Below are positions 19,080 to 34,381 of a stretch of 64,000 bases of DNA, piece after piece (within the stretch, counting starts at the first letter, position 1; the number at the start of each line of letters is the position of its first letter). Where the stretch lies: positions 62,001 through 126,000 of IMG/VR virus record IMGVR_UViG_3300001782_000005; one strand, given 5' to 3'. Under the pieces are notes generated by a model. It ran no database searches, was not told the origin of the DNA, and saw nothing but the letters and a program-made list of their open reading frames with translations. The translations under genes and the position numbers were made by a program.

Positions 19080-22076
19080 TCACTCCTTCAATACTCCAAT
19101 AACATTAAAATATGCATCAAGCAGTTTCACAGATTCTGAAACATCATCTTCCTCATCTTTCGGTTTAATAAATTCCGATTCAATTGTTTCGTTGATATAT
19201 CTATTCTTTAAATCTATACAATCTGATTTTGTTGTTAAAAATTCAGAAAGGTTAATTGGTCCATCGTGAGCAATTAAACATGCTGTCTCCATTTCCCCAC
19301 ATCTCTGACCACCACGATGCTTCCTTCCTCCTAAAGGTTGCAGAGTTTTCTTTGCATATGATCCAATACCTCTAGCGGCTAATCTTGTCTCAGCAATATG
19401 CACCATCTTAAAGAAATAGATATAACCAGCGGCAACTTTATTTAGAAGCTTCTCTTTTGAGATTGGATCATAGATATCGTATTCAAACGAAGTTCCAGTT
19501 TTCTCCATTGCCTCTTTTACCATTTCCATTGAAACAGATTCAAATGGAGGTTGAATTAGTGATAGCCCTGCAATAAAATCTTTACTAATCACCTTTGGCA
19601 GTTGTTCTTCGAATTGCTTGTAATACCAATTCCCTTCTGTATTATCAATCACTTTTATATAGTGAAGTAAACTTTTCCTAACTTGTTTTTGACTACCCTC
19701 ATCAATCAAGTCAAAAAGTTTCTTCCTTAAATCAATAAAAGACATTGATAGGTGTAACTCAAATAATTGACCAATATTCATCCTAGAGATTATCCCAAGC
19801 GGATTTATACAAATATCAACATTCCTACCATCTGGAAGTTGAGGCATTTTCTCATGTGGAACTATCCTTGAAATAACTCCTTTATTCCCATGCCTATTTG
19901 CAATTTTATCTCCAGCCTCTATTGGTCGATAATAAATTCCGAACATCTCAACTCTTACACCGTTAACTGGTTCCCCCTTAACTTTATACCTACCAATATG
20001 AGAGAATTTGCTCAAATTTCGATCTCGAATAAATTGTTTAGCTTGCTCGACCGAAAGATGTTCATGTAAGACTTTCTGAAAATCTTTTTCCTTCTTTTGT
20101 TGTTTCTCGATCTTTTCTTCAATCCATTTCTTATACTCAGGTATTTCTTTATTCCACACATTTGCATAGACATTTGCATCAGTAATCCAAACTCTCTTTC
20201 TAGTGGTGAGTGGTGTCTCTTCTTCAAAAATTGAATAGAAGTCTAATCCTGCCGTAACTTCTTTCATTTTTGCATAAGGTTTTCCGGGAGCTATCGACTC
20301 CATTACATTAGGTAGTGGTTTATATACATTCTCGGTTAAACTTAGAAGTACTTTATTAGGCGGAATTGTAAACGATAAATCTCTATAATGGACAGATGTA
20401 AATACATCTTCTTTAACTAATCTATCAGATATAACTATTCCGTCCTCATAATTATAACCATAATAGGTCATAACTGCAGTTAATAAGTTTCGACCAAAAT
20501 TTATCTTACCATCTGTACAGAATCCGCTCTCAGCTAATATATCTCCTGCTTTAAATTTATCTCCAACTTTTACATAGATATTCATACCATCCATATTCTC
20601 AACATATATTTTCCTAAGGCCAATATCAAAGACATCAGCTTCATTATCATCATATTTAACAATCAAGAATTCTTGATTCAAAAATACTACTTCACCATCC
20701 TTTTTTGCTCTTCTAACAAATTGAGTAAAATCTGTATATAATCCCTCACATCCAGATTGAATTGTGGGAATATCAAATTCCCTGAGCATTATTGATTGTC
20801 TCATCTGAGATGCAGACATTTGTAATCTAGTCTGATCATTATGCTCGAGAAAAGGAACCATCGAAACTGGAATTGAAATGATTTGTTTATCCAAAATTTC
20901 TTCAGAAAACCGTAAATTATTATCTAATTTTACATTTGGAATCAAATTTTGAATAACTCCACAATTATCCCTGTCTGGAGTATCCACTGGACAAATCCTA
21001 CCAAACATACTTGGACAAATATCTCTCAAATGCTCAGGAACGTTCTCACGATTAAAACCACCTGGCCCAATTAAACTTATTCTTGATAAACGAGTCAATT
21101 CCTCAATCGGATTTATTGCAAAATCAAATTGAACAATATCCGACACATTACACTCTGAGAGGATTTGAGAAGAATTGATATTAAACTTTGGTTGCCTTGC
21201 TGTTCTATTCGACATACATAAATCAAAGACAGCTTTAGAAACTTTTGCTAAAATCATATATTCAGCACATCTAACTCTCTTATTTCTAAAATCAGTATCA
21301 TCATATACTACTCCAGCAATCGCATTGAATAATTCTTCTATTAGGGATCCAGTTGTGAAATATTCAGCAGACATTACATCAGCCTTAAGTATTAGATCAA
21401 GAGCATATACAAGATCCTCACCCTTTGATTTTGCGTTATAGTGTGAATAGTGTGCTCCGACCTCTCTTATAAAATCATCTTGTGTCCAACCAGCTGAATT
21501 TTCATAATAGAGTTTTAAATCCAGCATTAACTTATCATATATAGTATTACCACTTACTTCTAGAGCAGATAGTTTGAATCTTTGATTCAATTCATCCATT
21601 CCATAGTAAGCAAACATTATTAAAGCAAATGGAACTTTCTTCCCAAGAATACTCAACTTTACATGAGGTTGTTCTCTATCGTCAAAGACCATTATTGAGG
21701 CAACATTCGTCCTCAATTTGATTGATTTTCCTCTAGTAACAATAGGAATATCAAAGAGTTGAAATTGTGGAATCTTTTTCCTGCCTTTAATCATTATATA
21801 GTTTCGATCAATAAGTTTTGGTATTGCCATACTCAAGTCTATCTCAGAGTTTCCTTTCTGTAATTTAATAACCATGCTCTGCTTTAAGGTTTTGAATAAC
21901 TCACCTGAAGTAAATTTTGAGTCTTTAATTATAAAATCAGTTACTGTAAATCCCAGTTCTTCGGCAGGTTTTAAGATTTGCCTTACTTTCTCGGTTAATG
22001 AAGAGTATTCTCTCTCTCTGATAGAGAAAATATTACTCTCCTCATTAACCTTAAAATACGGATTGAGTATGTTCAA
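19080..22076 (-). CDS. rpoB: DNA-directed RNA polymerase beta-like subunit (set 1)
   Basis: GRICPVDTPD, PFLEHND..R.QM.ASQMRQ, GYNYEDG, GDKIANRHGNKG, SRMN.GQ, QP..G....GGQRCGEME. Confidence 0.95.
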   Translation of the reverse strand: MNILNPYFKVNEESNIFSIREREYSSLTEKVRQILKPAEELGFTVTDFIIKDSKFTSGELFKTLKQSMVIKLQKGNSEIDLSMAIPKLIDRNYIMIKGRKKIPQFQLFDIPIVTRGKSIKLRTNVASIMVFDDREQPHVKLSILGKKVPFALIMFAYYGMDELNQRFKLSALEVSGNTIYDKLMLDLKLYYENSAGWTQDDFIREVGAHYSHYNAKSKGEDLVYALDLILKADVMSAEYFTTGSLIEELFNAIAGVVYDDTDFRNKRVRCAEYMILAKVSKAVFDLCMSNRTARQPKFNINSSQILSECNVSDIVQFDFAINPIEELTRLSRISLIGPGGFNRENVPEHLRDICPSMFGRICPVDTPDRDNCGVIQNLIPNVKLDNNLRFSEEILDKQIISIPVSMVPFLEHNDQTRLQMSASQMRQSIMLREFDIPTIQSGCEGLYTDFTQFVRRAKKDGEVVFLNQEFLIVKYDDNEADVFDIGLRKIYVENMDGMNIYVKVGDKFKAGDILAESGFCTDGKINFGRNLLTAVMTYYGYNYEDGIVISDRLVKEDVFTSVHYRDLSFTIPPNKVLLSLTENVYKPLPNVMESIAPGKPYAKMKEVTAGLDFYSIFEEETPLTTRKRVWITDANVYANVWNKEIPEYKKWIEEKIEKQQKKEKDFQKVLHEHLSVEQAKQFIRDRNLSKFSHIGRYKVKGEPVNGVRVEMFGIYYRPIEAGDKIANRHGNKGVISRIVPHEKMPQLPDGRNVDICINPLGIISRMNIGQLFELHLSMSFIDLRKKLFDLIDEGSQKQVRKSLLHYIKVIDNTEGNWYYKQFEEQLPKVISKDFIAGLSLIQPPFESVSMEMVKEAMEKTGTSFEYDIYDPISKEKLLNKVAAGYIYFFKMVHIAETRLAARGIGSYAKKTLQPLGGRKHRGGQRCGEMETACLIAHDGPINLSEFLTTKSDCIDLKNRYINETIESEFIKPKDEEDDVSESVKLLDAYFNVIGVLKE

Positions 22077-22320
22077 CTTTTCCTCCAGTCTTTTTTATAA
22101 TCCATGTTACAAACCTTATTACATCTCCGTCTGTAAGATCACTCATATAGTTTCTATCAATTTTTCTTGAAATCCACCCATAAAGATCATGATCTTTTAA
22201 TAAATGAGCATTTAATCTTATGAATCTTAGTAATCTCCTTCTAGTAAATTGTCTAGTTTGACAAGACACATCAAACGAATATAGAAGTCCTTCCACCTTC
22301 ATCACAAGTCTCTCCCACAT
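22051..22320 (-). CDS. small hypothetical protein between beta' and beta
   Basis: Overlaps both flanking genes. Confidence 0.5.
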   Translation of the reverse strand: MWERLVMKVEGLLYSFDVSCQTRQFTRRRLLRFIRLNAHLLKDHDLYGWISRKIDRNYMSDLTDGDVIRFVTWIIKKTGGKVEHTQSVF

Positions 22321-25010
22321 AAAATCTTATCCATAACACCATAATATCTTCCTGGTTGTAAGATTCCTTTTAAGATATGCTGTTTTGGTCTTGAAAATGC
22401 TAAACCTAATAACCAACTTTCATAACTTGGAACTTTCTGCACCGAGTGATACTCAGGAGATAATTTTTCTCTACCTTCTATTAATCTCCACTTCCTAATT
22501 CCTTTCCACATCAACTGGGATACAACACATTCAAAATGAACATGATGAATATTTCTATTTGTGTTATAGACATCAAAGAGATCTGATACAATATCTACAT
22601 AATTCTTATTATCGAATTTATGTAGAAGTTTTGATGCACTCGCAAGATCACCAATGATATCCATCTGCCTTACAGCTTCATCATCTGCTTGTTCACCTTC
22701 TTTTACATGGGCTACTCCAGATGTGTGGAACGTTCTAAGAACCAATTGAGTATTACACTCCCCTAAACTTTGTGCAGCAATGACCCCAATGAATCTGCTA
22801 TTTAAAACTTTATATAATTCTCCATAACATTTCTTACATATTTTTGGACTTGTACAAAAGATTGGACTCCTTATGTGAATAACCTTTCCAACTAAATCTA
22901 AATAATTTTCCTTCGTTATCATCTCCAAAACACCATTATTATCATAATATCTATAAGTCAACATTCTAGCTTTCTTATTATCTTTTACGTAAACTAAAAG
23001 AAGATCATTTGTTCCACAATCTTCATGGTCTCCTATCTGAAGATTTGCACAAGCAAAAATTAGTTTTCTCGAAAGATATCCAGATGCTCCAGTATTAAGT
23101 GCGACATCAAGTAATCCTTTTCTACAACCATATGTAGAATTGAAAAATTCTTCCTCAGTCAGACCTTCTAAAAGACTATGTTTTATTGGAGTTGGAAGAA
23201 TCTGACCCCTAAAATTAGAGATAAACCCTCTAGTTAGAATTATCTGCCTGACTTGATCCCAACTACCTCTTGCTCCAGACTCAACCATATATGAATATTT
23301 AAAACTATCTTTAAGTGATCTTGTAGTCTCATCATTTGAGATCATCTCAATCTGATGTCTTATACTATGATCAGAATAGATTTCGTGCTTTATTTTTGTT
23401 AAATCTCCATTAAATGAGTCAAGAGACATGGTCGCACCAAATAAAGTTGAATACTTGAAACCAATAAATTTTATTCTATCAAGAACTTGCTTAATAATAT
23501 CAACAGGATATTTAGATTTAATATCATTGAGTATCTTCATCAATTTTCTTTTTCTGATTGCTTCGTTGACTAAAGGATAATCAACCGGCAGACACTCATT
23601 AAATATTTTAATTCCCTCACTAATTTTCTCTCCCTTAAATTCAACTTCATTTGATAAATCTAGAAAGCTATCACTTGTTAGAGCATATACTCCAAGAATT
23701 ATGTCTTGACTAGGGGTTGTCGCTAAACTCTCATTCGCAGGATTGCTTAAGTTTCTTGTTATTAGAAATTTCTCTCTAACTTCTTGTTTTGATTGCTCAG
23801 AGATTGGAATATAGACTGCCATCTGGTCACCATCAAAATCAGCATTAAAACCAGGGCAAGCAAGTGGATGAATCTTAATAACATTGTCTAGAGATATCTT
23901 AACATTAAAACCCATCATACTTAATCTGTGTAACGATGGTTGCCTATTTAATAAACAAACCTCATCTTTGGCAATTTCTTCACAAACTCGGTATAGGACT
24001 GGTGACTTCGTTTCTATACAATCATCAACAAAATCAATTGCATCATTTAATAACTTAAATCTACCAATCTCAATGAGTTTCTTTGATATCTGCAGTTTAA
24101 ATAATTCAAGAAACATTAGGTAAGGCAAAACACACTCATCTAAATTCAATACCGGATCAGGAATTATCACTGCCCGACCAGAAAAGTCAATTCTTTTTCC
24201 TAAAATATTTCCCCTAATAAGACCTTCTTTCTTTGCTAATTTAGAGATAATATGTGAATATAACTCATTTACATCTTTCTGAATTTGAGTAAAGTAACTA
24301 TAGAATAGTTTCTTATCTCTATGTATATCAACTATTGTATCTCTCATAATTTCTTTTTTCGTCAATATCTGAATATAATATCTATTTATCTGATCAACCA
24401 CTTGGTTGTTTCTTTCAATATTTTTCGCTGCTGGTCTAAGATCAGGGGGCAACACAAGCACATTATGTATGAACATCTTATCCAAATTATCTCGAATAAC
24501 TTTCCACTCCAGAATTCCATCCTCAACAAACATATGGGAGAGATCCCCTATTAATTTTCCAATTGCCTCTATCTTCTCAAATTTTTCTGCATCTTTCGGA
24601 ACCGCAGATTCACTAGTGGCTACTCCATATTCATCTTCTCGTACAAATAAAATACTTTGTTCATTCTTCATTAAATCATCCAGAAGTCCTTTTACTTTTG
24701 AACCTCCAATATCAACTATTAACTCATAGAAAATCGGATTGACAACTGGAAATGGAAGAACTATTCTAGCAAATCTCCTTCTCCTCTCATCACTATTAAC
24801 AATATCTACCTCACAAATAGCACAAGTTCCACCAGCACCAGAAATTCCATAATACGTGCCACACTGGCATGTATAATTCCTAACTGGTCCAAAGATTTGT
24901 TCAGAGAATAAACCCTTCGGATGGAACTTCTTCTTGCTCATCATTTTCGTTGAACTTACTTGTTTTAGCTCCTCCGAAAACTTATTAATGTCAAGAAGAC
25001 TTGGCATCAT
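22302..25010 (-). CDS. rpoC: DNA-directed RNA polymerase beta'-like subunit (set 1)
   Basis: GLFSEQIFGP + CQCG..CAIC, GKRIDFSGRAVI, NRQPSLH, NADFDGDQM, SGYLSRKL, TQLVLRTFHTSG. Confidence 0.96.
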   Translation of the reverse strand: MMPSLLDINKFSEELKQVSSTKMMSKKKFHPKGLFSEQIFGPVRNYTCQCGTYYGISGAGGTCAICEVDIVNSDERRRRFARIVLPFPVVNPIFYELIVDIGGSKVKGLLDDLMKNEQSILFVREDEYGVATSESAVPKDAEKFEKIEAIGKLIGDLSHMFVEDGILEWKVIRDNLDKMFIHNVLVLPPDLRPAAKNIERNNQVVDQINRYYIQILTKKEIMRDTIVDIHRDKKLFYSYFTQIQKDVNELYSHIISKLAKKEGLIRGNILGKRIDFSGRAVIIPDPVLNLDECVLPYLMFLELFKLQISKKLIEIGRFKLLNDAIDFVDDCIETKSPVLYRVCEEIAKDEVCLLNRQPSLHRLSMMGFNVKISLDNVIKIHPLACPGFNADFDGDQMAVYIPISEQSKQEVREKFLITRNLSNPANESLATTPSQDIILGVYALTSDSFLDLSNEVEFKGEKISEGIKIFNECLPVDYPLVNEAIRKRKLMKILNDIKSKYPVDIIKQVLDRIKFIGFKYSTLFGATMSLDSFNGDLTKIKHEIYSDHSIRHQIEMISNDETTRSLKDSFKYSYMVESGARGSWDQVRQIILTRGFISNFRGQILPTPIKHSLLEGLTEEEFFNSTYGCRKGLLDVALNTGASGYLSRKLIFACANLQIGDHEDCGTNDLLLVYVKDNKKARMLTYRYYDNNGVLEMITKENYLDLVGKVIHIRSPIFCTSPKICKKCYGELYKVLNSRFIGVIAAQSLGECNTQLVLRTFHTSGVAHVKEGEQADDEAVRQMDIIGDLASASKLLHKFDNKNYVDIVSDLFDVYNTNRNIHHVHFECVVSQLMWKGIRKWRLIEGREKLSPEYHSVQKVPSYESWLLGLAFSRPKQHILKGILQPGRYYGVMDKILCGRDL

Positions 25011-25335
25011 ATTCCTCCCAACTAAAATCTAACCATGGTTTGAAATAACAATCGTCGAGATAGAAATTACATATTACCATCTCAATAAATTGCCTAAATT
25101 TTTCGTCGTATTTCTGCCTCTTAATCTTCTCATCTAAGCAAAGTTCTCCAGTATCAGGATTCGCATTTGGATGCTTTGCATTAATGATCACCTTACTGAT
25201 ATAACCATCTACAAGGTAAATTTTATAATTAGTTACAATGTAATCATTATTAATTCTAGAAATTCTAAATGTTTCATCCTTGTAGAAAAATCTTCCCGGA
25301 ACAAGATACGTATTATAATCTAATATCTGTTCCAT
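24991..25335 (-). CDS. minimal UBC/E2-like protein
   Basis: HPNANPDTGELCLD matches the E2 signature HPN(I)...GxICLD including the catalytic Cys. Confidence 0.65.
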   Translation of the reverse strand: MEQILDYNTYLVPGRFFYKDETFRISRINNDYIVTNYKIYLVDGYISKVIINAKHPNANPDTGELCLDEKIKRQKYDEKFRQFIEMVICNFYLDDCYFKPWLDFSWEEYDAKSS

Positions 25336-26204
25336 TACGCACCACCAGTAACAAATAGTAACTGAATATAATTTTCCTCAACTCTAATCACAAAATTTCT
25401 TTCAAACGGATAGAGATTCATTACTGATTTTAAATTATCAACTACAGCCTGAGGGGTATTTAATTGGCCTCTGGGAACAATCTTGCAACCAACATGTCTT
25501 TCCCTCTCACCCAAGCAAACTTTAACATCTCTCTCTTGATTTATTTCCATAATTGGGCGAAAACTTTGCTCTAACTTTAGCAATCTAGAATCATCTATAT
25601 CAGGTTCATAAATTAAATCTGTATCTCTACTTTTGTCCTGAATATCTCTACTAATTGCTTTTGCATGATGATCTAAACTTATTTCATATATTTCTTGGTT
25701 AGCTATCCATTGATTAATGATACTATTACTATCAATCAAGATAGCAAGTTGTAATGCAGCATTTTTAAGATCGTTTTTCTTTAAAGGTAGGTTATATCTG
25801 CCGTCATAATTAAAAGGATAGTTTATATTTTTTCGACAGTCGATAATAAGGTATCGGCCAGAAATAGATGCTCGAATATCTATTATATTGCCTCGGTCAT
25901 AGACATAGTCTCTGCAATCTATAACCAGGTCACAGGTAGGAAGTTCGGTTTCTCCTTCTATAAATTTTTCTCTGGATATTGCCATTATAATATCTTCATT
26001 AAAAGACTTCAAGTGATTATATAAAGCATTTACCTTTAAATCTCCAATGTCTCGTTTTGTATAAATCGAATTTCTAATATTTTTCTCTCGTACAATATCT
26101 GGATCAATTAAAATTAGTTCTTTTATGTTATCAGTACTAGCCAAACTTTCAGCTAGATAACCGCCTAAAGATCCAATTCCAAGGATTGCGATTCTTTGTT
26201 TCAC
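25335..26204 (-). CDS. ThiF/E1-like protein (divergent)
   Basis: ILGIGSLG, LIDPDIV..KN, K, VIDC; lacks the canonical NLxRQ arginine. Confidence 0.8.
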   Translation of the reverse strand: MKQRIAILGIGSLGGYLAESLASTDNIKELILIDPDIVREKNIRNSIYTKRDIGDLKVNALYNHLKSFNEDIIMAISREKFIEGETELPTCDLVIDCRDYVYDRGNIIDIRASISGRYLIIDCRKNINYPFNYDGRYNLPLKKNDLKNAALQLAILIDSNSIINQWIANQEIYEISLDHHAKAISRDIQDKSRDTDLIYEPDIDDSRLLKLEQSFRPIMEINQERDVKVCLGERERHVGCKIVPRGQLNTPQAVVDNLKSVMNLYPFERNFVIRVEENYIQLLFVTGGA

Positions 26205-26242
26205 GCTCGATCCTTTATTGTTTGTTCTTCATTTAGAGAATA

Positions 26243-26273
26243 GTGACCGAGATCAATAAATGACCTCGGTCAC
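26243..26273. terminator. intergenic hairpin
   Basis: GTGACCGAG...CTCGGTCAC inverted repeat. Confidence 0.5.
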
Positions 26274-26276
26274 CAG

Positions 26277-26750
26277 TTATTTTAAACTATTTTTGAGTTC
26301 AATTATTTCTCGAACCCTCTCTAACAAACTCTTGGTTTCTTCACGAAACGTCTGAGCACGACCGTACTGTATTGGATCAAGATTCTTTATATAATGGTGA
26401 AATAAATTTGGCCGTCCAACATCATCGTAGCATGCCTTCAAATGCTCAACTAGACGTGTTACTGTTCCCTCATAATGCTCAATGACAATCTCCGATTCAT
26501 CAATGGTCACTAACATATCTATAAGACGCATCAACTTTTTAAAGTGTAATTTCTCAACAACTTTGAGGTTTTCTTTACGCCTAATTTTGTCGAGCTCTTC
26601 TTGTTTAATCATATACAATTTAATTTTCTCACCTTTTTCGTTTTCAACAAGGTAATGATCTTCATCTTTCTCAATAATTTTAAGATCCACGAGTTTGTCT
26701 CCATGATGCCAGAAGGGAAATACATATACACTCTTTATTAGCATCTCCAA
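26277..26750 (-). CDS. hypothetical protein
   Basis: 157-aa ORF bracketed by two hairpins. Confidence 0.6.
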   Translation of the reverse strand: MEMLIKSVYVFPFWHHGDKLVDLKIIEKDEDHYLVENEKGEKIKLYMIKQEELDKIRRKENLKVVEKLHFKKLMRLIDMLVTIDESEIVIEHYEGTVTRLVEHLKACYDDVGRPNLFHHYIKNLDPIQYGRAQTFREETKSLLERVREIIELKNSLK

Positions 26751-26751
26751 A

Positions 26752-26787
26752 TGTGGTGGGACAAGTTATATAACCTGCCCCACCACA
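26752..26787. terminator. hairpin downstream of the Ubl gene
   Basis: TGTGGTGGG...CCCACCACA inverted repeat. Confidence 0.5.
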
Positions 26788-26801
26788 AATTAAACAACTT
26801 T

Positions 26802-27269
26802 TTATCCCTTCCGGCCTGCGGCCTTTAGGAATTCGAGATTGTCCCCTTCTTTCAGCACATAGTTGCCATCGACAGTCTTTCCATTGACAACTCCCTGTGC
26901 CATTCGGTCTATGTTCAAGACTTCCCTGAGAAACTCAGAGACAGCACCAACTGTCTTTCCACAGACGCTGAAGTCTCCAGCGGCAGCACCACATGACACA
27001 CGAATCGTTGTAGTAGTCTTATCACCAAATTTTGCAGTTGGTTTGGTGAGAATACTCTGCATGCTAAATTCAGCCTTGGTAAGTTTGTCATCCTTTGGTG
27101 CAGCTTTGGGAGCAGCAGCCGCCGTAACTGGACCCTGTTTCTCAAGGATAAGGTCAATAACAGTATCTTTGGGTTTCTTGGAGTACCCAACACAACCCAA
27201 ATTCTTTGCCATTGCTCGAAGTTCTTTCACAGTCTTCTCTGCCAGTTGTTCTCTAGTAAAACTAGCCAT
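26802..27269 (-). CDS. ubiquitin-like (beta-grasp) protein with N-terminal Rho-N/HeH-like domain
   Basis: TVKELRAMAKNLG..GYSKK.K N-domain; GKTV...VNG...VLKEGDNLEF and C-terminal AAGRKG. Confidence 0.85.
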   Translation of the reverse strand: MASFTREQLAEKTVKELRAMAKNLGCVGYSKKPKDTVIDLILEKQGPVTAAAAPKAAPKDDKLTKAEFSMQSILTKPTAKFGDKTTTTIRVSCGAAAGDFSVCGKTVGAVSEFLREVLNIDRMAQGVVNGKTVDGNYVLKEGDNLEFLKAAGRKG

Positions 27270-27282
27270 TCCGATCTCCTTT

Positions 27283-27984
27283 TTAATTCTCTAGTGGTTT
27301 TCTAGTTTTAGGATCAGCTCTCATTGATAGAACATCGAAATACACTTCAGAGTAATTGGCATTATTCTTCACAACAGTATTGTAGAATGCAAAACACATA
27401 AATGTTGCAACTCCTAAATTTGTAAAGAATAATTGTGGTTCTGATTGGGATAACTCCTCGCAACTCATCTCACCCGGTGTTCTATCTATTGGATGTTCAA
27501 TTTCCGGATGATAATCACTCAATGACGGAGTTATGTTTCTACCCCCCTTTCTCACAAAGATTTGGACATTGCCATCAGTGTACTCATTCCCTCCTGATAT
27601 AACAATAATGTCATTGAGTGTTTTGGTATGATCTGAGATAATTTTTCTCGTCTTATGATTATCAACGCATACGAAGACTATATCTCCCGACTTAATGAGC
27701 GACTCTACGTTACTACGGTCAACATAATCATCAAATGCAGAGTAATTTAATTCTGTGTATTTCTCTTGAAATTCGGTGGCCTTAACTATTGATTTCTTGC
27801 CACCAGCGATCAAAAACTCCTGTCTATCTCGGTTCTTTGGTTCGAAAGTATCTCCATCTATGAAGGTAATCCTAGCTTCAAATCCGTTTCCATAATTTAG
27901 AAATCTAGAGAGTTTATCAGCTAGGACTGTACCAACTCCACCAATACCTATGACTTTAATCAGTAACTCAGTCATCATCACCAC
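27283..27984 (-). CDS. E1/ThiF-family Ubl-activating enzyme
   Basis: VIGIGGVG, IDGD.FEPKNRDRQ, CVDN..TR, SGGN, SCEE (candidate catalytic Cys), QLFFTN. Confidence 0.9.
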   Translation of the reverse strand: MVMMTELLIKVIGIGGVGTVLADKLSRFLNYGNGFEARITFIDGDTFEPKNRDRQEFLIAGGKKSIVKATEFQEKYTELNYSAFDDYVDRSNVESLIKSGDIVFVCVDNHKTRKIISDHTKTLNDIIVISGGNEYTDGNVQIFVRKGGRNITPSLSDYHPEIEHPIDRTPGEMSCEELSQSEPQLFFTNLGVATFMCFAFYNTVVKNNANYSEVYFDVLSMRADPKTRKPLEN

Positions 27985-28984
27985 ACCCCTCCTCTCTGGT
28001 ATTTAACGGGAGTTGGTGTTGGTAGAATCCTTCTTGCCCAGTATAGAAGCCACCGCCGCCTTCATCCGGTTCAAGACCATCAAGAGGATCGTACTCTTCT
28101 GGATCGAAGACGTAGCCTCCGCCGTATCTATACCAATAGGGGAGCCAGGATCCGTGGGGTAACTCACTGGGGTCGGCAGGGGATCGAACCCTACCTCGCT
28201 GAGTTGATCCAGGTGACCAAGTATAGACCACCGGGGTTCTCTTCTCAACAAACTCCATCCATGTAGGTTCAAAAGGGACTTCAGCAACATAAAATCCTTT
28301 TTGAGATTTTGAATCTTTCTCATATACTCTTACACCATTCTTTATTTCAAAGGATGGGCGAAATATGTGCTGATGATAGTTACAATAATCAACAGATTCA
28401 GCCCCTTCTACATAATCATTGGTATCAACTATAAAGCGCATCCCATTCACTACAATAGATGTAGAGATAGTGAGAAGACCTTTACTTAAGTCACCGACAG
28501 TTATATGTAAACCGTCAAAATGCTTTTCATCAGAGTCATCAATGCCAGAATGGAAAGCTCCAAAACCGGCATGACTATGAATTGTACACATTAAGATATA
28601 ACCTTGTGCTTGCCAAGGAGACTCTCTCTTATAATCTACAGAACCTCCTGAGACTTCTTGAAAAGGTACTTGAATTTTAAAATCTCTCTTTTTCTCATTA
28701 TAGTGAAGCAAAGCAATAGCTTCACTTTTATGCTCATCGTAAACTTTTCTGAAGAAACTAACAATTCTTTTAAAATCCTCTCCCGGAACTTTTGGTATAT
28801 CTAATGTCGCATAGGACTTCACATGATTTAAATGCGGAATACCACTTGCTGGAACTAATGCATCAAGTATACCCAATTTCTTTCTAATATAGATGCCATT
28901 ACCTGCAACCACATAGAAAATATCATCATCGGGCAACTCTTGAGTTCCATCTGCTACGAAGACGTTGAACATGCACACCTCCAA
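27968..28984 (-). CDS. JAB/MPN+ metalloisopeptidase
   Basis: SEA...TIHSHAGFGAFHSGIDDSDE (E...HxH...S..D). Confidence 0.9.
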   Translation of the reverse strand: MEVCMFNVFVADGTQELPDDDIFYVVAGNGIYIRKKLGILDALVPASGIPHLNHVKSYATLDIPKVPGEDFKRIVSFFRKVYDEHKSEAIALLHYNEKKRDFKIQVPFQEVSGGSVDYKRESPWQAQGYILMCTIHSHAGFGAFHSGIDDSDEKHFDGLHITVGDLSKGLLTISTSIVVNGMRFIVDTNDYVEGAESVDYCNYHQHIFRPSFEIKNGVRVYEKDSKSQKGFYVAEVPFEPTWMEFVEKRTPVVYTWSPGSTQRGRVRSPADPSELPHGSWLPYWYRYGGGYVFDPEEYDPLDGLEPDEGGGGFYTGQEGFYQHQLPLNTREEGCGDDD

Positions 28985-31458
28985 TCTGCCACCATCCTTA
29001 GACCTTGTCTATCTGGTACTTCTATATAACCACCATGCATATTAGGATAGACATATTTAACTGAAAATCTATCAAGTTGTCTCTGTGTAAAACGAGGTTG
29101 CAGAAGACCCCACCAAATAGTCCTCTCATCTGGGTATACAGTTCCGGTAGTTATATATCTATGCATATACGCAGTCGGGTATTTTCTCAATCTCCCATAA
29201 CCATCTTTCATCAGCATATATGGAGACCATCTAGAAGACATAGTGTACATAAGAAAATCTCCCATCTGATGTGCAATTCTAGTTGCTGGTGGCGCAATCT
29301 GCACCTGATTCCACAATCTAGAAGATGGAGCCAAATATGAAAATTTAGAGAGATAGTGTTCATGTGCCCAAAGTGTACAACGATTCGAGCAGAGCATAAG
29401 AGGAACATCTGTTCCCGTATCAGTTATAAAACCAATGATTTGATTTACATCTTTCTTGGGGAATTTACTAATTCCCGCAACATTAGCTCTTAGTTTTGTG
29501 CCTGCTATTAAACCATTATACTCCTCAATAATCTTTCGAATTTTTCCAATAAATACCTGACCCCGACCTAAATCTGCATAGTTTATTGTTGCTATATCAT
29601 CATCTTTACCTCTTGCAGTTATCTTAATTATTCTATTTTCATCAATACTTATACCTATTATCTCTCGTATTATGGTCATATCTTCGGGTTTATTCCAATC
29701 TACAAAGACTACTTTATCTCCAATCTTGAAGTTCAAATCAATGTCATAACTTGGAAGATTGAACTCTCCATCCTTTACTAAATTCTCAAATGCATAATCA
29801 GCATTGAAGGAAAATTCATTAGATCTCGTGCCAACATAGAGAATACCAGTACCCTTCATTATCCTATGATCCCCATTGATAGAAGTAAACATCAACGGAC
29901 CAACTCGAAAAATGGGATGATGAACTGAAGTATCCTCATCCATCAACTTATACCGACTCTCAATAGTTTCAAAGGTTTCGTTTATCTCATAGCTAGATTC
30001 TCGATCTTTAAACCTTACACTTAAAAGACCTCTGTCATTTACATCAATTCCTTTAAGTTCGGCAGGTCTCCCAGTATAAAGGAGTATATCGGAAGGTCTG
30101 CTTATCAGAGTATACTCACGACCAACTTCCATCTCAATACCATAAAGGTTTATCTTCTGGTTAAAAATCTTCAAATCCAGGACGTCAGCAAAATAATAGT
30201 CTATACCTAACTTAACTTCGATATTGCCATCCATGGCAGTTCTGATTTCATTTACTTTTCGGTAACTCCTCATGGGGTATGCCATTTCAACAATATCTCC
30301 AGCTCTTATTGTAAGCCCATTCTTTAACTCCAATGAATCTATTGTATTTGTTTTAACTAATTTCTTAACTAAGGTATCCTTCATCTTCTCCGTTAATAAT
30401 TTTTCAGTCAATTGATCCTCCTCATCTCTAAGTATAAACGTATGAGGTGGATAACCAGGCATACCCTTAAATCCATTAACCCAATAAGTTTTACCTTCAA
30501 GTTCAAATTTATCTCCTATAGAAAGTAAATTTTCCCCTAAAGATATACTCTCACATGGATCCATATATACCTTGGCCTCATCTGTCTGAATTGGTTCAGT
30601 AAATAATTCAGCCAATTTGTAGAAATCAAGAGTTCTGCTATAAGTCGACTGCCTTTTAAGACTTGCTACTTTTGTTATCTCCTCCTTCAAAGTTCTTGCA
30701 TGATGTTTCCAATCTACTTTAAATACAAACATTGGGTCCTTATAAGAATAATACTGCCAGGTTAGAAAGTCAGACACTTCCCCAATATCTTCGTACATCT
30801 TATATGCATGGAGGTAATCAGTATTGAAACTATTGTTCCAGAACCTATTAAGAGCTTTATTGCAAACTGATTGAGTATTATCTCCATAGGATGAACCTTC
30901 TCCCAGACAAACATTGAAACTATGATCAATGTTTAGCAGATTTGGAATCAAAAGATAATCTACTATGCTGGTTATTGGATGTATCCTATAAAATACTCTA
31001 AGTGCATATAACTCAAAGAATTTGGTAATGGACATTATATAAACGACATATGGGAAAGCTAAAGTTACTCTATATGGTCTCTTTCCATCCCTATACTGTT
31101 TTAATACTTCATCAGTATAACCAAAATAGTCCAACTTTCCGGTCTTCCTCAATTTCTCGATGTTATATTCCAAACTCATATCGAGGCGAATTGTTCTAAC
31201 ACAGGGAGGGTCTTCAATAACTACGACCCTCCCACCGTTGCTAGTAGGTTGTAAAAAACGACAATTCTGAGGAAGAATTTCGTCTGGCCGGCGATTAGCC
31301 ATTCTAGTTATCAAACGGGTAATTAATTCACTTGTATTTAACAACCTTTGCCTTATTGTTGGTGTCGCTTTTGCTTCATCTTCACCAGAGTCAATTTCAG
31401 ATAGGCAAAGACTAGAAAATTTCTCACTTATAATTATCTCGTTTATCTCACGTTTCAT
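28954..31458 (-). CDS. large protein with N-terminal prokaryotic E2 (family D-like) domain
   Basis: LAFPY...PNLLNIDHSFNVCLG...FWNNSFN; ~550-aa unknown C-terminal region. Confidence 0.75.
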   Translation of the reverse strand: MKREINEIIISEKFSSLCLSEIDSGEDEAKATPTIRQRLLNTSELITRLITRMANRRPDEILPQNCRFLQPTSNGGRVVVIEDPPCVRTIRLDMSLEYNIEKLRKTGKLDYFGYTDEVLKQYRDGKRPYRVTLAFPYVVYIMSITKFFELYALRVFYRIHPITSIVDYLLIPNLLNIDHSFNVCLGEGSSYGDNTQSVCNKALNRFWNNSFNTDYLHAYKMYEDIGEVSDFLTWQYYSYKDPMFVFKVDWKHHARTLKEEITKVASLKRQSTYSRTLDFYKLAELFTEPIQTDEAKVYMDPCESISLGENLLSIGDKFELEGKTYWVNGFKGMPGYPPHTFILRDEEDQLTEKLLTEKMKDTLVKKLVKTNTIDSLELKNGLTIRAGDIVEMAYPMRSYRKVNEIRTAMDGNIEVKLGIDYYFADVLDLKIFNQKINLYGIEMEVGREYTLISRPSDILLYTGRPAELKGIDVNDRGLLSVRFKDRESSYEINETFETIESRYKLMDEDTSVHHPIFRVGPLMFTSINGDHRIMKGTGILYVGTRSNEFSFNADYAFENLVKDGEFNLPSYDIDLNFKIGDKVVFVDWNKPEDMTIIREIIGISIDENRIIKITARGKDDDIATINYADLGRGQVFIGKIRKIIEEYNGLIAGTKLRANVAGISKFPKKDVNQIIGFITDTGTDVPLMLCSNRCTLWAHEHYLSKFSYLAPSSRLWNQVQIAPPATRIAHQMGDFLMYTMSSRWSPYMLMKDGYGRLRKYPTAYMHRYITTGTVYPDERTIWWGLLQPRFTQRQLDRFSVKYVYPNMHGGYIEVPDRQGLRMVADWRCACSTSS

Positions 31459-31484
31459 CGCCTACTCCTCAGAGATTACCAAGA

Positions 31485-31847
31485 TTAAGTCTGAGCAACT
31501 GTCGTTGTTTCTTCCTCTGACGCTTCTTCTTGTGTGGGTTCAGATTGAGTTTGTGGAGCAGCTTGTTCAGACTCAGCTTGGACTTCATCGAGATTTTGCC
31601 AACCACTTCCTCCCGACTCGCCAGCCTGTGGGGTTTCTGACGCTGGAGGTACTGGAGGTGCTTGACGGCCCTGCTCTGCCATGACTTGCTCAACCGGGCG
31701 ATTCTCATTGAAAGCGACCATATAATTAACCATATCTCCCTTTGGCCTACCAATGACACCCTTGATGCTATGATCACGACAAAGTTGGTTCAACTCGACA
31801 ATTGTCTTGCCTTCCAAATTTTCTCTTCTCAGGTCCTCTGATGCCAT
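31485..31847 (-). CDS. Rho-N/HeH-like domain protein with acidic disordered tail
   Basis: RENLEGKTIVELNQLCRDHSIKG resembles the Ubl N-domain. Confidence 0.6.
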   Translation of the reverse strand: MASEDLRRENLEGKTIVELNQLCRDHSIKGVIGRPKGDMVNYMVAFNENRPVEQVMAEQGRQAPPVPPASETPQAGESGGSGWQNLDEVQAESEQAAPQTQSEPTQEEASEEETTTVAQT

Positions 31848-31849
31848 AC

Positions 31850-32215
31850 CTACTCTCCTCTCATTTGTTTATAAGTTTCCGCAAAGCGTAGAAGAACCTT
31901 TTCAGCCTTTACCTCTTTAACTTCTATAGCTCTAATTCTTCTAGCTGGTCTATCCACCGAGGAAGGTGGACCTTTTACCCAAACGCTTACTATGTAAGAC
32001 TCTTTGGATTCTCTTTCGAGAGCAACAAATGCAACCTCTCCTTGACTCCGACCAGGAACTTCCAAACAGAGAAATATATTTGGTCCTGTTGGTAAATCAT
32101 CAATATGCTCTACTTTATCTTTTTCTTCTTCAAAGATTGTGTCACACAATCTTTTAACTTGTTCATCCAATTCAGAAGATTTAATTTGAGTTAACAACTC
32201 ACTAAGAACTGGCAT
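31850..32215 (-). CDS. hypothetical protein
   Basis: Tightly packed ORF on coding strand. Confidence 0.55.
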   Translation of the reverse strand: MPVLSELLTQIKSSELDEQVKRLCDTIFEEEKDKVEHIDDLPTGPNIFLCLEVPGRSQGEVAFVALERESKESYIVSVWVKGPPSSVDRPARRIRAIEVKEVKAEKVLLRFAETYKQMRGE

Positions 32216-32568: not shown

Positions 32569-32874
32569 CTACTTTCTTATCGAGTATTGCTTCTCAGCTG
32601 TCCGAAGCCATTCAGTTCTGTCAAAAGGGACACTTCTCCAATCTTTCTTATCAAGATCATACACATGAATGATCTTGTGTTGATCTATCAGCTTGAGGAT
32701 CTTAGCAAGGTTTACATCTTTTGGATGCATCTCTTTCGGAATATTAGCGAAATTGAGAGTACACCTCATTATTCTTTCTTCATTGTTTCTCTTCCTGAAC
32801 TTTACAGTAACCTCATCCTCAGTTCTGATTCTCTCAAGAAACTCAATTGCGTTCTTGATTACATCATCTGCCAT
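32569..32874 (-). CDS. WYL_2/Sm-like SH3 beta-barrel phage protein
   Basis: VKFRKRNNEERIMRCT...VYDLDKKDWRSV. Confidence 0.75.
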   Translation of the reverse strand: MADDVIKNAIEFLERIRTEDEVTVKFRKRNNEERIMRCTLNFANIPKEMHPKDVNLAKILKLIDQHKIIHVYDLDKKDWRSVPFDRTEWLRTAEKQYSIRK

Positions 32875-33354
32875 TCAGGTACCTCCAAAACCATATTTGA
32901 CCATAAGCTGCTCTAGTTCTATAAGGAAATTTGCAGTATCTTGAGTATACTCTTCAAGTACTATCTTTCCCTTAGCCCTAACATTGGGACTTTCAGCCTT
33001 CATATAGAAGGGGAGGACTAACTCACCTTTCTCAACTGGTGCTACTGCCTGACCTCTTACTGGAGAACCCAACGGAACAGTTTGTGGTTCAATGGTCTTA
33101 TTTTTGAAGTTAACATAGAGAAACTTATTCTCCCGATTTTTTGTAACATGACGACCTTTTCTTAGGAACCTGATCACATTATGAATAGTCTTTCTGCTCT
33201 TTTCACTTATTCCGGTATCAATAACCGCCTGCATCAAGTCGTCCTCTTCAAAACCATACTCTGTACCGTATTTAGCACATAGATTATCTTTGATCAGAAG
33301 ACCACGATCTTGATACCTCATTCTTCTTGCCGGTTCCTTTACCACTCTAAGCAT
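32875..33354 (-). CDS. hypothetical protein
   Basis: ORF coupled to neighbours. Confidence 0.55.
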   Translation of the reverse strand: MLRVVKEPARRMRYQDRGLLIKDNLCAKYGTEYGFEEDDLMQAVIDTGISEKSRKTIHNVIRFLRKGRHVTKNRENKFLYVNFKNKTIEPQTVPLGSPVRGQAVAPVEKGELVLPFYMKAESPNVRAKGKIVLEEYTQDTANFLIELEQLMVKYGFGGT

Positions 33355-34381
33355 CCCTCCTTTCTTTATGGACTAAGTTATCAAAGAGATTTGGATTCTT
33401 CGATAACAACTTGGACATAATCATACACGTCCAATTACATTTCCGGCAATATTTTTCTTTATCTGATTTAATCATTTTCTTCAGTGCAAAATAGAGTCGA
33501 CCGTCTTCATTTATACAATTGATAGCTTTGATTTTTGGAGTCATCATTCCTCTAATCCTAAGACAAAGTCTGACAGACCCGTCTGCATCAATTGTCAAGT
33601 TGTGTACATCCTTCTCAATTTCACAATCTAATTCTGCCGGAAGTATTTTGATTATCTCAGGGAGGAGGACCGAGGCCATATGAACATCTAATTTATTGTC
33701 AATGATTCGGTTAAAAGCATCCAGAAGCACGCTGTCTTTCTGCACTAGCAGAGTCTCATCCGTAATATGAGCAAAGTCATAGTACGGAGACTTCGCGATG
33801 TCAATCACTGTGATGTCGCTGCTTATTCCCAATTTAGACAATTCGTCAACTAATTGGTAGAGATAACTAACCGTTTTACTATCGACAGTTATCTCTGCAA
33901 CGATATCTTTTATACATTCTCGATACTTTTTCAATCGTTCAAGACCTTTGATGCTCTTTTTGACTCGGTCTGTTCCCTCCTCCTCTGAGAAAATGATTGG
34001 ATCAATTGAAGAAGTTAAACCAGTGATATAATCTGTTTTAGATATTAGATTTTCTAACATTGGTTGAACTTCATCACTATTGTTGGTTATGATGGTGTAG
34101 TTAATATCATTGTCATTACAATAATTTACAATCTCTGGTAGATCTTTTCTTAGTAGTGGCTCACCTCCATAAAATAGGTGGAAACAGTCTGGGTTATGTA
34201 TATGAAGTCTTCTAAGACACTCAATAACAAAACCCGTTGACATCTCATTCTTGAAATAATGCCCCAAGGATGGGTAGTGATTCTTAGGTCTATCTTTATA
34301 ATTTCTTGCGATTCTACAATAACCACAAGATAGGTTACATCTTCTTGTCAAGAGCCAACTTACAATTTGAATTTTATCCAT
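33347..34381 (-). CDS. radical SAM enzyme with C-terminal Cys cluster (Twitch/SPASM-like)
   Basis: CNLSCGYC, GGEPLLR, ITN; DGSVRLC...CRKCNWTC. Confidence 0.9.
   Translation of the reverse strand: MDKIQIVSWLLTRRCNLSCGYCRIARNYKDRPKNHYPSLGHYFKNEMSTGFVIECLRRLHIHNPDCFHLFYGGEPLLRKDLPEIVNYCNDNDINYTIITNNSDEVQPMLENLISKTDYITGLTSSIDPIIFSEEEGTDRVKKSIKGLERLKKYRECIKDIVAEITVDSKTVSYLYQLVDELSKLGISSDITVIDIAKSPYYDFAHITDETLLVQKDSVLLDAFNRIIDNKLDVHMASVLLPEIIKILPAELDCEIEKDVHNLTIDADGSVRLCLRIRGMMTPKIKAINCINEDGRLYFALKKMIKSDKEKYCRKCNWTCMIMSKLLSKNPNLFDNLVHKERRDA

What the first reader, a model, noticed from the sequence alone, without database searches (positions are those of the whole stretch)
24991..31847. Virus-encoded ubiquitin-like conjugation cassette (E2-JAB-E1-Ubl)
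Seen, in transcription order: Rho-N-like protein, 834-aa protein with E2-D-like domain (PN..N....VCLG...FW.NSF), JAB peptidase (HSH...S..D), E1 (GxGGxG, NRDRQ, SC), Ubl ending GRKG. Established: this gene set resembles prokaryotic Ub-like operons such as PRTRC (JAB, E2-D, ThiF and a Ubl ending GxKG); bacterial Bil systems conjugate Ubls as anti-phage defence. Inference: here the virus carries the machinery, possibly to tag host or viral proteins or to counter host Ubl defences. The ~550-aa extension on the E2 may act as a built-in substrate adaptor.
Basis: partly seen in the sequence, partly recalled or inferred. Interest (0 to 1): 0.85.

Follow-up and report, generated by a model that had tools for sequence, protein, structure and literature searches.

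The report
Jumbo-phage ubiquitin-like conjugation gene module
An uncultured jumbo phage, and at least 73 related viral contigs, carry a fixed-order gene block encoding a ubiquitin-like tag, two activating enzymes, two conjugating enzymes and a trimming protease, so these phages probably tag proteins themselves with machinery otherwise known from bacterial plasmids and anti-phage defence.

Summary
The E2-D, JAB, E1 and Ubl set is a distant relative of the plasmid PRTRC / "Ubl-JAB-E1-E2" operon class. It shares the gene order B-A-ThiF, the Asn-x7-Cys E2-D motif and the Ubl tail EFxxxxGxKG. It fails the curated PRTRC score cut-offs and has no adjacent ParB or PRTRC E gene; no PRTRC B-F model matched, and the 157-aa gene is unassigned.

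A second E1-like gene (25335-26204) and a 114-aa protein with an invariant HPN-x8-Cys motif (24991-25335) are always present.

Across 73 viral loci the order is p121, E2-D, JAB, E1a, Ubl, a variable gene, E1b, E2b. Catalytic residues are 100% conserved. The Ubl is made with extra residues after its terminal Gly in 21 of 69 orthologs, and as a head-to-tail di-Ubl in one.

The roughly 550-aa E2 extension is modelled as a tandem array of KOW/Tudor-like barrels. The upstream Rho-N-like gene is lineage-specific and not core. Targets and biological role are unknown.

Verdict: a new variant of a known kind, and interesting.

The parts
31850..32215 (-). p121: conserved 121-aa gene of unknown function immediately upstream of the E2-D gene
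   Evidence: A homolog lies directly upstream of the E2-D gene in essentially every related locus. No Pfam, PHROG or NCBIfam hit.
31485..31847 (-). 120-aa HeH/Rho_N-like protein with an acidic tail; a lineage-specific insertion, not a core member
   Evidence: Rho_N E 0.042. It hits the Ubl HMM through its N-terminal domain, 4e-9. A true counterpart (59% identity) was seen only in L006 among the seven loci aligned; a weaker second hit occupies the same slot in L014 and L015. The more distant relatives lack it.
28954..31458 (-). 834-aa E2-D protein: small N-terminal domain, E2-D domain and a C-terminal beta-barrel array
   Evidence: The family has 1494 representative clusters at E<1e-3, and the top 150 are all full-length. 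AF2 model: pLDDT 91.9.
30709..31287 (-). E2-D (UBC-superfamily) domain, residues about 58-250; Asn176-x7-Cys184 (Cys codon 30907-30909)
   Evidence: Pfam Prok-E2_D in 9 of 14 members. hhalign to the Bacillus phage Edson E2_D gives Prob 85%, E 6.2e-6, with the Cys aligned. N176 and C184 are invariant in 121 sequences. The model shows a beta-meander, then a loop carrying Asn and Cys, then a helix.
28957..30561 (-). About 6-7 tandem small beta-barrels (KOW/Tudor/SH3-like), residues about 300-834; putative target or partner-binding array
   Evidence: Foldseek PDB top hits are chains Z and W of three Pol II complex entries (2e-7; from memory these are Spt5). Spindlin, the SETDB1 triple Tudor and SAWADEE follow. 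DSSP is all-beta.
27968..28984 (-). JAB/JAMM metallopeptidase (PRTRC-A-like); the true start is probably the ATG at residue 5
   Evidence: Prok-JAB 8.8e-5 and TIGR03735 4.8e-10. E88, H136, H138, S146 and D149 are 100% conserved in 74 orthologs.
27283..27984 (-). E1a: complete ThiF/MoeB-type E1 with a catalytic cysteine
   Evidence: ThiF 3e-18 and PRTRC_ThiF 1.8e-12. G13/15/16/18, D43, N51, R54, Q55, K63, D108 and C175 are 100% conserved in 72 orthologs.
26802..27269 (-). Ubl: N-terminal HeH/Rho_N domain, linker, ThiS/TGS-type beta-grasp, C-terminus AGRKG
   Evidence: Rho_N 4e-6. Beta-grasp families match the C-terminal domains of orthologs: TGS 59/68, ThiS 48/68, Ub-Mut7C 26/68. G152, K154 and G155 are 99% conserved. 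Of 69 orthologs, 21 are precursors with 1-5 extra residues, and one locus encodes a di-Ubl.
26277..26750 (-). 157-aa variable gene of unknown function between the Ubl and E1b
   Evidence: Only 17-27% identity to its positional counterparts. It is undetected in about half of the loci.
25335..26204 (-). E1b: second ThiF-type protein; the nucleotide-binding motifs are kept. It lacks the Arg/Gln of the NxxRQ motif and has no conserved catalytic Cys. It carries a conserved C-terminal tail, T-G-[AGS]-A.
   Evidence: ThiF 2e-13. PADLOC Cap2-type E1-E2 models, 2e-12. G9, G11, G14, D34, K57, D96, C97 and G287 are 100% conserved and A289 is 99%. 68 of 69 tails end G-[AGS]-A (the other ends GGS), mostly ETGAA. 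It is homologous to E1a only over residues 2-105.
24991..25335 (-). E2b: 114-aa minimal E2-like protein with an invariant HPN-x8-Cys66; its start overlaps the E1b stop (ATGA)
   Evidence: H55, P56, N57 and C66 are invariant in 118 sequences. AF2 pLDDT 88. The top Foldseek PDB hits are all E2/UEV but weak, E>=0.7. The PDB profile top hit is an E2 aligned on HPN..C, E 0.09.

Best explanation
This is a phage-encoded protein-conjugation module of the ubiquitin type. It descends from the same stock as the plasmid PRTRC / "Ubl-JAB-E1-E2" operons but is expanded.

Inferred pathway:
1. The JAB peptidase trims the Ubl precursor (extra residues, or a di-Ubl) to expose the Gly of the G-x-K-G tail.
2. E1a adenylates that Gly and takes it onto Cys175 as a thioester.
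3. The Ubl passes to Cys184 of the 834-aa E2-D protein. The array of KOW/Tudor-like barrels on that protein holds the target or a partner.
4. The Ubl is then joined to a target amine. JAB can reverse this.

Because the Ubl carries a conserved HeH/Rho_N nucleic-acid-binding-type domain, conjugation would attach such a domain to the target.

The invariably linked E1b/E2b pair is a second arm. E1b has no conserved catalytic Cys and would hand an adenylate directly to Cys66 of E2b, acting either on the same Ubl or on its own conserved T-G-A-A tail.

Shown here: gene content, homology, residue conservation, synteny, precursor forms and predicted folds. Inferred: every chemical step, the targets and the biological role.
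For: - Fixed gene order in 73 viral loci.
- 99-100% conservation of the E1a ATP-binding and Cys residues, the JAMM motif, the E2-D Asn/Cys, the E2b HPN/Cys and the Ubl GxKG tail.
- Ubl precursors: 21 of 69 carry residues after the terminal Gly, and L073 encodes a head-to-tail di-Ubl with the junction AGRKG|A.
- The Ubl C-terminal domain matches beta-grasp families in 59 of 68 orthologs.
- E2-D homology: Pfam in 9 of 14 members, and hhalign Prob 85% with E 6e-6 to a bona fide E2_D protein.
- The nearest E1a and JAB relatives lie in E2_D-JAB-ThiF cassettes.
- PRTRC protein C has the same tail.
- The genes overlap or are spaced by less than 75 nt.
- There is precedent for an E1 without a catalytic Cys (BubCD, PMC11601596), and for E1 substrates that are protein tails ending in Gly or Ala (Cap2/cGAS, 10.1101/2022.03.31.486616).
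Against: - There is no experiment on this or any PRTRC-type system, so conjugation itself is inferred.
- The window's own E2-D Pfam score is below threshold.
- The UBC fold of the E2-D domain could not be tested alone, because Foldseek on the whole chain is dominated by the barrel array.
- The E2b fold matches to E2s are not significant, and only 1 of 118 members touches UQ_con.
- No target, E3 or acceptor is identifiable.
- The fold of the E1b C-terminal 180 residues is unknown.
Confidence: 0.6

Rival explanations
1. Counter-defence device. The module exists mainly to neutralise host Ubl-based immunity (Bil, type II CBASS, Bub). JAB might strip host Ubl or cGAS conjugates, or the E1/E2 enzymes might mis-tag or sequester host defence proteins. 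This is an alternative purpose for the same chemistry.
For: All characterised bacterial relatives act in phage defence (10.1101/2023.09.04.556158; 10.1101/2022.03.31.486616; PMC11601596). E1b resembles the Cap2 E1 domain (PADLOC 2e-12; PDB Cap2 8e-8). The JAB site is intact.
Against: The module is a fixed, syntenic core block next to the RNAP and replication genes in every relative, down to 22-28% identity. That is unlike typical variable anti-defence islands. It also encodes its own Ubl and full conjugation machinery, which a simple de-conjugase strategy would not need.
Confidence: 0.15
2. Sulfur-carrier system. The Ubl is a ThiS/MoaD-type thiocarboxylate carrier activated by E1a. It would thiolate a cofactor, tRNA or phage DNA, with no protein conjugation.
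For: The Ubl matches ThiS and TGS. E1a is ThiF/MoeB-like with a Cys. A radical-SAM gene and QueD lie in the conserved neighbourhood.
Against: - Two E2-like proteins with invariant Cys, and an intact JAB, always co-occur.
- Precursor and di-Ubl forms exist.
- No rhodanese, desulfurase, ThiG or MoaE matched among the cassette proteins.
- The radical-SAM protein is a generic SPASM/viperin-like one, not ThiH or MoaA.
- The whole set is homologous to PRTRC-type cassettes.
Confidence: 0.08
3. Eukaryote-like heterodimeric E1. E1b is a catalytically dead partner of E1a, as in SAE1/UBA2 or NAE1/UBA3. Its C-terminal region recruits E2b in the manner of a ubiquitin-fold domain. There would then be one cascade with two alternative E2s, not two arms.
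For: E1b keeps the Rossmann and ATP-binding glycines but has lost the Arg/Gln of the NxxRQ motif and has no conserved Cys after residue 100. E1a and E1b always co-occur. The E1b and E2b genes overlap.
Against: D34, K57 and the DCRD motif (D96, C97) are 100% conserved and R104 is 93% conserved in E1b, which suggests a working nucleotide site. The fold of its C-terminal part is unknown. Bacterial E1s characterised so far are homodimers (PMC11601596; 10.1101/2022.03.31.486616).
Confidence: 0.12

Closest known systems
PRTRC system (ParB-related, ThiF-related cassette; TIGR03735-03742), e.g. Novosphingobium pentaromativorans plasmid pLA4
   Same: The gene order E2-D (protein B), JAB (protein A), ThiF is shared. 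The Ubl (protein C) ends IEYRRAVGTKG, against LEFLKAAGRKG here. Both have the Asn..Cys E2-D motif.
   Different: - No adjacent ParB or PRTRC E gene; no PRTRC B-F model matched, and the 157-aa gene is unassigned.
- The NCBIfam scores are far below the cut-offs: A 39 against 102, ThiF 47 against 145.
- The Ubl lies after the ThiF gene and carries an HeH domain.
- The E2-D protein is extended by 550 aa of beta-barrels.
- There is an extra E1b/E2b pair.
- The carrier is a phage, not a conjugative plasmid.
"Ubl, JAB, E1-like, E2-like" operon class of Iyer, Burroughs and Aravind 2006 (PMC1779556, Table 1 row 6d)
   Same: The four components are the same. [quoted passage not shown] The class includes Bacillus cereus/thuringiensis elements, which are among the best plasmid hits for E1a and JAB.
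   Different: That class is described with a conserved His after the Cys and a JAB N-terminal domain carrying conserved Arg and Trp. Neither is among the invariant residues here. It was never reported as a core phage module or with a second E1/E2 pair.
Unannotated E2_D-JAB-ThiF cassette of cultured jumbo phages (Bacillus phage Edson PV796108; Acinetobacter phage ME3, annotated with 'PRTRC system protein A' and ThiF)
   Same: It is phage-borne, with the same order E2_D, JAB, ThiF. Edson's E2_D scores 40 bits in Pfam and aligns to the 834-aa family.
   Different: Edson's E2_D is a stand-alone 241-aa protein. The Ubl, E1b and E2b HMMs found nothing within 6 kb. No tblastn match to the 834-aa protein exists among 50,697 phage records.
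Bil system (BilABCD) and type II CBASS Cap2/Cap3
   Same: The logic of Ubl or tail activation by an E1, an E2 with a Cys, and a JAB deconjugase is shared. E1b matches Cap2-type E1 models. The E1b tail ending G-A-A recalls the cGAS tails conjugated by Cap2.
   Different: Those are host defence systems. There is no CD-NTase here, and no Bil or CD-NTase model matched the cassette proteins in PADLOC. E1 and E2 are separate genes in the reverse order to the Cap2 fusion.
Bub pathway (BubCD, PMC11601596)
   Same: There is precedent for an E1 lacking a catalytic Cys that passes the Ubl directly to the E2, and for the Ubl being made as a precursor cleaved by a pathway peptidase.
   Different: Bub uses Ser/oxyester intermediates and a Ser protease. 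Here both E2-like proteins keep an invariant Cys, and the peptidase is a JAMM enzyme.
Eukaryotic polyubiquitin and Ub-fusion precursors
   Same: Head-to-tail Ubl repeats occur, as do extra C-terminal residues after the terminal Gly that must be removed.
   Different: The beta-grasp is of ThiS/TGS type, not ubiquitin type. The tail is GxKG, not RGG. Each repeat carries an HeH domain.

Membership tests
PRTRC system (NCBIfam TIGR03735-03742) | Protein A and ThiF proteins score above the curated cut-offs | tested here: not met
   PRTRC_A 39.3 bits against a cut-off of 101.8. PRTRC_ThiF 47.1 bits against 144.75.
PRTRC system (NCBIfam TIGR03735-03742) | Adjacent ParB-family gene and proteins D, E and F | tested here: not met
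   No NCBIfam hit to PRTRC B-F or ParB among the eight cassette proteins. The only ParB-like gene, at 1144-2547, is 24 kb away.
PRTRC system (NCBIfam TIGR03735-03742) | Gene order B (E2-D), A (JAB), ThiF, and a Ubl ending GxKG | tested here: met
   pLA4 has the order B-A-ThiF, and its protein C ends VGTKG. The window has E2-D, JAB, E1a and a Ubl ending GRKG.
Prok-E2_D (PF14460) | Pfam match at or above the gathering score | tested here: not met
   The window protein scores 14.3 bits against 25. Nine of 14 relatives hit the family, best E 8.4e-5.
Prok-E2_D (PF14460) | Profile-level homology to a bona fide member, with the catalytic Cys aligned | tested here: met
   hhalign of A8 against the Edson E2_D (40 bits in Pfam) gives Prob 85% and E 6.2e-6 over residues 58-225, with NxxxxxxxC aligned. 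N176 and C184 are invariant in 121 sequences.
Prok-E2_D (PF14460) | UBC/E2 fold | tested here: inconclusive
   The AF2 topology (beta-meander, Asn/Cys loop, helices) is compatible. Foldseek on the whole chain returned only barrel-array matches. The domain could not be searched alone.
JAB/JAMM metallopeptidase | E...HxH...S..D metal and catalytic motif | tested here: met
   E88, H136, H138, S146 and D149 are 100% conserved in 74 orthologs. Prok-JAB scores 22.8 bits, just under the cut-off of 25.
E1 / ThiF-MoeB superfamily (E1a) | ThiF domain above cut-off, GxGxxG, NxxRQ, Mg-binding Asp, catalytic Cys | tested here: met
   ThiF 66.3 bits against 28.1. All of these residues are 100% conserved.
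E1 / ThiF-MoeB superfamily (E1b) | The same catalytic set | tested here: not met
   The ThiF domain passes (50.4 bits), and GxGxxG, D34, K57 and D96 are kept. The Arg and Gln of NxxRQ are not conserved, and there is no conserved Cys beyond residue 100.
Ubiquitin-like beta-grasp modifier | Beta-grasp fold with an exposed or processable C-terminal Gly | tested here: met
   TGS 59/68, ThiS 48/68 and Ub-Mut7C 26/68, all sub-threshold. GxKG is 99% conserved. Precursor and di-Ubl forms exist. The fold was not modelled.
UBC/E2 superfamily (E2b) | HPN motif followed by a catalytic Cys | tested here: met
   H55, P56, N57 and C66 are invariant in 118 sequences.
UBC/E2 superfamily (E2b) | Significant sequence or fold match to E2 enzymes | tested here: inconclusive
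   UQ_con hits 1 of 118 members at 0.016. The PDB profile top hit is an E2 at E 0.09. The top five Foldseek hits are all E2/UEV, but with E>=0.7 and TM 0.34-0.38.
Bil / CBASS type II defence systems | Matches to the system-specific protein models (BilA-D; CD-NTase with Cap2 and Cap3) | tested here: not met
   PADLOC gives only E1-domain matches to the Cap2-type 'E1-E2' models. No Bil, CD-NTase or Cap3 model matched.

The most novel reading that the evidence does not exclude
A clade of jumbo phages runs a two-armed ubiquitin-like cascade as core biology. One arm (E1a to E2-D) attaches an HeH-domain Ubl to targets chosen by a built-in KOW/Tudor array. In the other arm, a Cys-less E1 (E1b) activates its own conserved T-G-A-A tail, or serves as the dead half of a eukaryote-style heterodimeric E1, and charges a minimal HPN-Cys E2. 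Either version would be an arrangement not described in any cellular or viral system.
Probability: 0.2. Interest if true: 0.88.

Novelty: new variant of a known kind. Interest (0 to 1): 0.68.

Why it matters
Every prokaryotic ubiquitin-like conjugation system characterised so far (CBASS Cap2/Cap3, Bil, Bub) belongs to the host and acts against phages. The PRTRC-type class has been predicted since 2006, and no experimental study of it turned up in the literature searches run here.

Here the same chemistry appears as a strictly conserved core module of a large uncultured jumbo-phage lineage. The E2-D protein family alone has 1494 sequence clusters at 50% identity. The module has several eukaryote-like traits: polyubiquitin-like precursors, two E1-type and two E2-type proteins, and an E2 with its own substrate-binding array.

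It offers a tractable set of small proteins for testing what PRTRC-type systems actually do. It also raises the possibility that phages tag host or their own proteins, perhaps on nucleic acid, as part of the infection programme.

Tried and rejected
- blastn and tblastn of the cassette and the 834-aa protein against 50,697 phage records: no match.
- A scan of one genome per bacterial and archaeal species with A1 found no relative. This method is pattern-limited.
- ESM Atlas gave nothing usable for E2b, whole E1b or the C-terminal part of E1b. The E2b model is poor, E1b has no model, and the E1b look-alikes are simply viral ThiF proteins.
- Tests of whether the E1b C-terminal 90 or 170 residues are a Ubl related to the cassette's Ubl: hhalign Prob <1%. 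The PDB profile search found nothing. The question remains open.
- E2-D against E2b profile comparison: no similarity.
- PRTRC protein B against the 834-aa family: only E 0.036, although the Cys is aligned.
- The PDB profile search with the Ubl domain found only a short beta-hairpin resemblance to an FHA domain.
- The promoter and terminator scan found no more sites than in shuffled sequence.
- I considered the Rho-N-like gene as a module member and rejected it.
- I considered ThiH or MoaA identity for the neighbouring radical-SAM gene and rejected it.
- Both structure-prediction jobs went to E2b and the 834-aa protein, so E1b, the Ubl and JAB were not modelled.

Full report
**Setting.** The window is part of a 277-kb IMG/VR viral contig. 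All genes run on the minus strand. The window carries two sets of multisubunit RNA polymerase beta/beta'-like genes, topoisomerase II, SbcCD, a helicase, a ligase and QueD. The nearest cultured relatives of its polymerase genes are jumbo phages such as YerA41 and phiR1-37, at 22-32% identity. The viral assignment therefore rests on IMG/VR, on these phage-type genes and on 73 related viral contigs. No structural gene was seen among the 20 window ORFs scanned against PHROGs.

**The observation.**
- The 834-aa protein (28954-31458) contains the stated motifs, but its own Prok-E2_D match is weak (E 0.034).
- The 338-aa protein is a JAB peptidase (Prok-JAB 8.8e-5, PRTRC protein A 4.8e-10).
- The 233-aa protein is a ThiF-type E1 (3e-18).
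- The 155-aa protein has an N-terminal Rho_N/HeH domain (4e-6), weak ThiS/TGS matches and ends GRKG.
- The 120-aa upstream protein is only marginally Rho_N-like (E 0.042).

These are a 157-aa gene, a second ThiF-type protein of 289 aa that I call E1b (ThiF 2e-13; Cap2-type E1 models 2e-12), and a 114-aa protein with HPNANPDTGELC that I call E2b.

**Conservation.**
- Neighbourhoods of six distant homologs of the 834-aa protein (28-57% identity) show the same gene block between a radical-SAM/WYL-like group and the RNAP beta'/beta genes.
- A profile scan of IMG/VR gave 73 distinct loci. HMMs built from the orthologs found the order p121, E2-D (about 850 aa), JAB, E1a, Ubl, an optional variable gene, E1b, E2b in essentially every locus with enough flank.
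- The E2-D family is large. It has 1494 representative clusters at E<1e-3, and the best 150 are all full-length. The E2b family has at least 121 clusters, none of them annotated.
- The Rho-N-like gene has a clear counterpart (59% identity) only in the nearest sub-lineage and is not part of the core. The 157-aa gene is poorly conserved.

**Residues.** These figures come from about 70 non-identical orthologs.

| Protein | Conserved residues |
|---|---|
| E1a | GxGGxG, D43, N51/R54/Q55, K63, D108 and Cys175, all 100% |
| JAB | E88, H136, H138, S146, D149, all 100% |
| Ubl | G152, K154, G155 at 99% |
| E2b | H55, N57, C66 at 100% (also invariant in 118 sequences) |
| E2-D | N176 and C184 invariant in 121 sequences |
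| E1b | G9, G11, G14, D34, K57, D96 and C97 at 100% |

The Asn-to-Cys spacing in E2-D is the eight residues I recall for canonical E2s; that comparison is from memory. E1b lacks the Arg/Gln of the NxxRQ motif and has no conserved Cys after residue 100. Its last residues are conserved: G287 at 100% and A289 at 99%, with tails mostly ETGAA.

**The Ubl behaves like a processed modifier.** Of 69 orthologs, 47 end exactly at the Gly of GxKG. Another 21 carry one to five further residues, mostly a single Cys; the remaining one (L043) is an aberrant 101-aa ORF with no GxKG. L073 encodes two complete HeH-plus-beta-grasp units head to tail, with the junction AGRKG|A and a second AGRKG at the stop. This is the pattern of ubiquitin and Ubl precursors, and it implies a peptidase that cuts after the Gly. 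JAB is the obvious candidate. The C-terminal domain matches beta-grasp families (TGS, ThiS, Ub-Mut7C) in up to 59 of 68 orthologs, always below threshold.

**Relationship to known systems.**
- The best plasmid matches of E1a and JAB lie in Firmicute and sphingomonad plasmids.
- On Alicyclobacillus plasmid p1 the ThiF gene follows a JAB gene and a protein that passes the Prok-E2_D threshold.
- Bacillus jumbo phage Edson has an unannotated E2_D (40 bits), JAB, ThiF trio. Acinetobacter phage ME3 is annotated with PRTRC protein A and ThiF.
- The deep 834-aa alignment matches Edson's E2_D with Prob 85% and E 6e-6 over residues 58-225, with the Cys in register.
- A genuine PRTRC locus (Novosphingobium pLA4) has the order ParB, E, C, two unnamed genes, B, A, ThiF. 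Its protein C ends IEYRRAVGTKG, against LEFLKAAGRKG here.
- The class corresponds to row 6d of Iyer et al. 2006 (PMC1779556).
- The window fails the NCBIfam PRTRC cut-offs and has no adjacent ParB or PRTRC E gene; no PRTRC B-F model matched, and the 157-aa gene is unassigned. It is a relative, not a member.
- The comparison cassettes show no E1b, E2b or HeH-Ubl within about 6 kb.

**Structures.** The 834-aa model is confident (pLDDT 91.9).
- Residues about 58-290 form a beta-meander, a long loop carrying Asn176 and Cys184, and then helices. This is compatible with an E2 fold but was not tested alone.
- Residues about 300-834 are six or seven small beta-barrels. The best PDB matches are chains Z and W of three Pol II complex entries (2e-7), which I recall to be the multi-KOW factor Spt5. 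Spindlin, the SETDB1 triple Tudor and SAWADEE follow. This supports a binding array.
- BFVD matches are all uncharacterised phage proteins. One is a 241-aa protein matched at TM 0.59.
- The E2b model (pLDDT 88) has a beta-meander, then the HPN loop, the Cys and a helix. Its top five PDB matches are all E2 or UEV proteins, but none is significant. I rate E2b as an E2-like protein at about 0.75-0.8.

**Mechanism.** The best-supported reading is a protein-conjugation cascade, described under the best explanation, at confidence 0.6. Rivals are a counter-defence purpose, a sulfur-carrier role and a heterodimeric E1. The sulfur-carrier reading fits poorly with two Cys-bearing E2-like proteins, the JAB peptidase and the precursor forms. 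The neighbouring radical-SAM protein is a generic SPASM/viperin-like one. The fixed core position next to the polymerase and replication genes argues for a role in the phage's own programme rather than an accessory anti-defence gene, but this is inference.

**Literature.** Searches found no description of this module. The nearest is a report of three ThiF-like genes in an Asgard archaeal virus (10.1101/2021.07.29.454249).

**Verdict.** The feature is real and ordered. It is a new, expanded variant of the PRTRC-type Ubl system, carried as core genes by an uncultured jumbo-phage clade.

Noticed in passing
window 19080-25010 and 51878-59317: There are two separate sets of multisubunit RNA polymerase beta/beta'-like genes. 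The first lies directly downstream of the cassette. The nearest cultured relatives are jumbo phages (YerA41, phiR1-37, Staphylococcus SA1) at 22-32% identity.
   Followed up: partly
L073:14419-15378: The Ubl gene encodes two complete HeH-plus-beta-grasp units head to tail (319 aa), each ending AGRKG. This is a polyubiquitin-like precursor.
   Followed up: yes
L081:9836-14637; L078:9562-9888: L081 has two tandem paralogs of the 850-aa E2-D gene (785 and 814 aa). L078 has an extra short Ubl-like ORF upstream of its E2-D gene.
   Followed up: no
window 32569-34381 and 39878-40297: The conserved upstream neighbours are a SPASM/viperin-like radical-SAM protein and a WYL_2-like 101-aa protein. QueD (7-deazaguanine pathway) lies further up. 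The same genes flank the module in distant relatives.
   Followed up: partly
L013:5102-8186 (Bacillus phage Edson, PV796108): This cultured jumbo phage carries an E2_D (Pfam 40 bits), JAB, ThiF trio annotated only as hypothetical proteins. It would be a practical model for the simpler version of the system.
   Followed up: partly
JAB orthologs, e.g. L003:11358-13025, L008:12601-13773: The region C-terminal to the JAB domain varies from about 100 to 400 aa between relatives. It often has Cys-rich NPCxDCIFR-type motifs that look like zinc ribbons. The window's copy lacks them.
   Followed up: no
window 22051-22320: A small 89-aa ORF sits between the RNAP beta' and beta genes. Called genes of 89 and 79 aa occupy the same position in L006 and L003.
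   Followed up: no
window 1144-2547: A 467-aa protein has a ParB-like N-terminal match (PHROG 2e-7). It lies 24 kb from the cassette, so it is not a PRTRC-style adjacent ParB.
   Followed up: no
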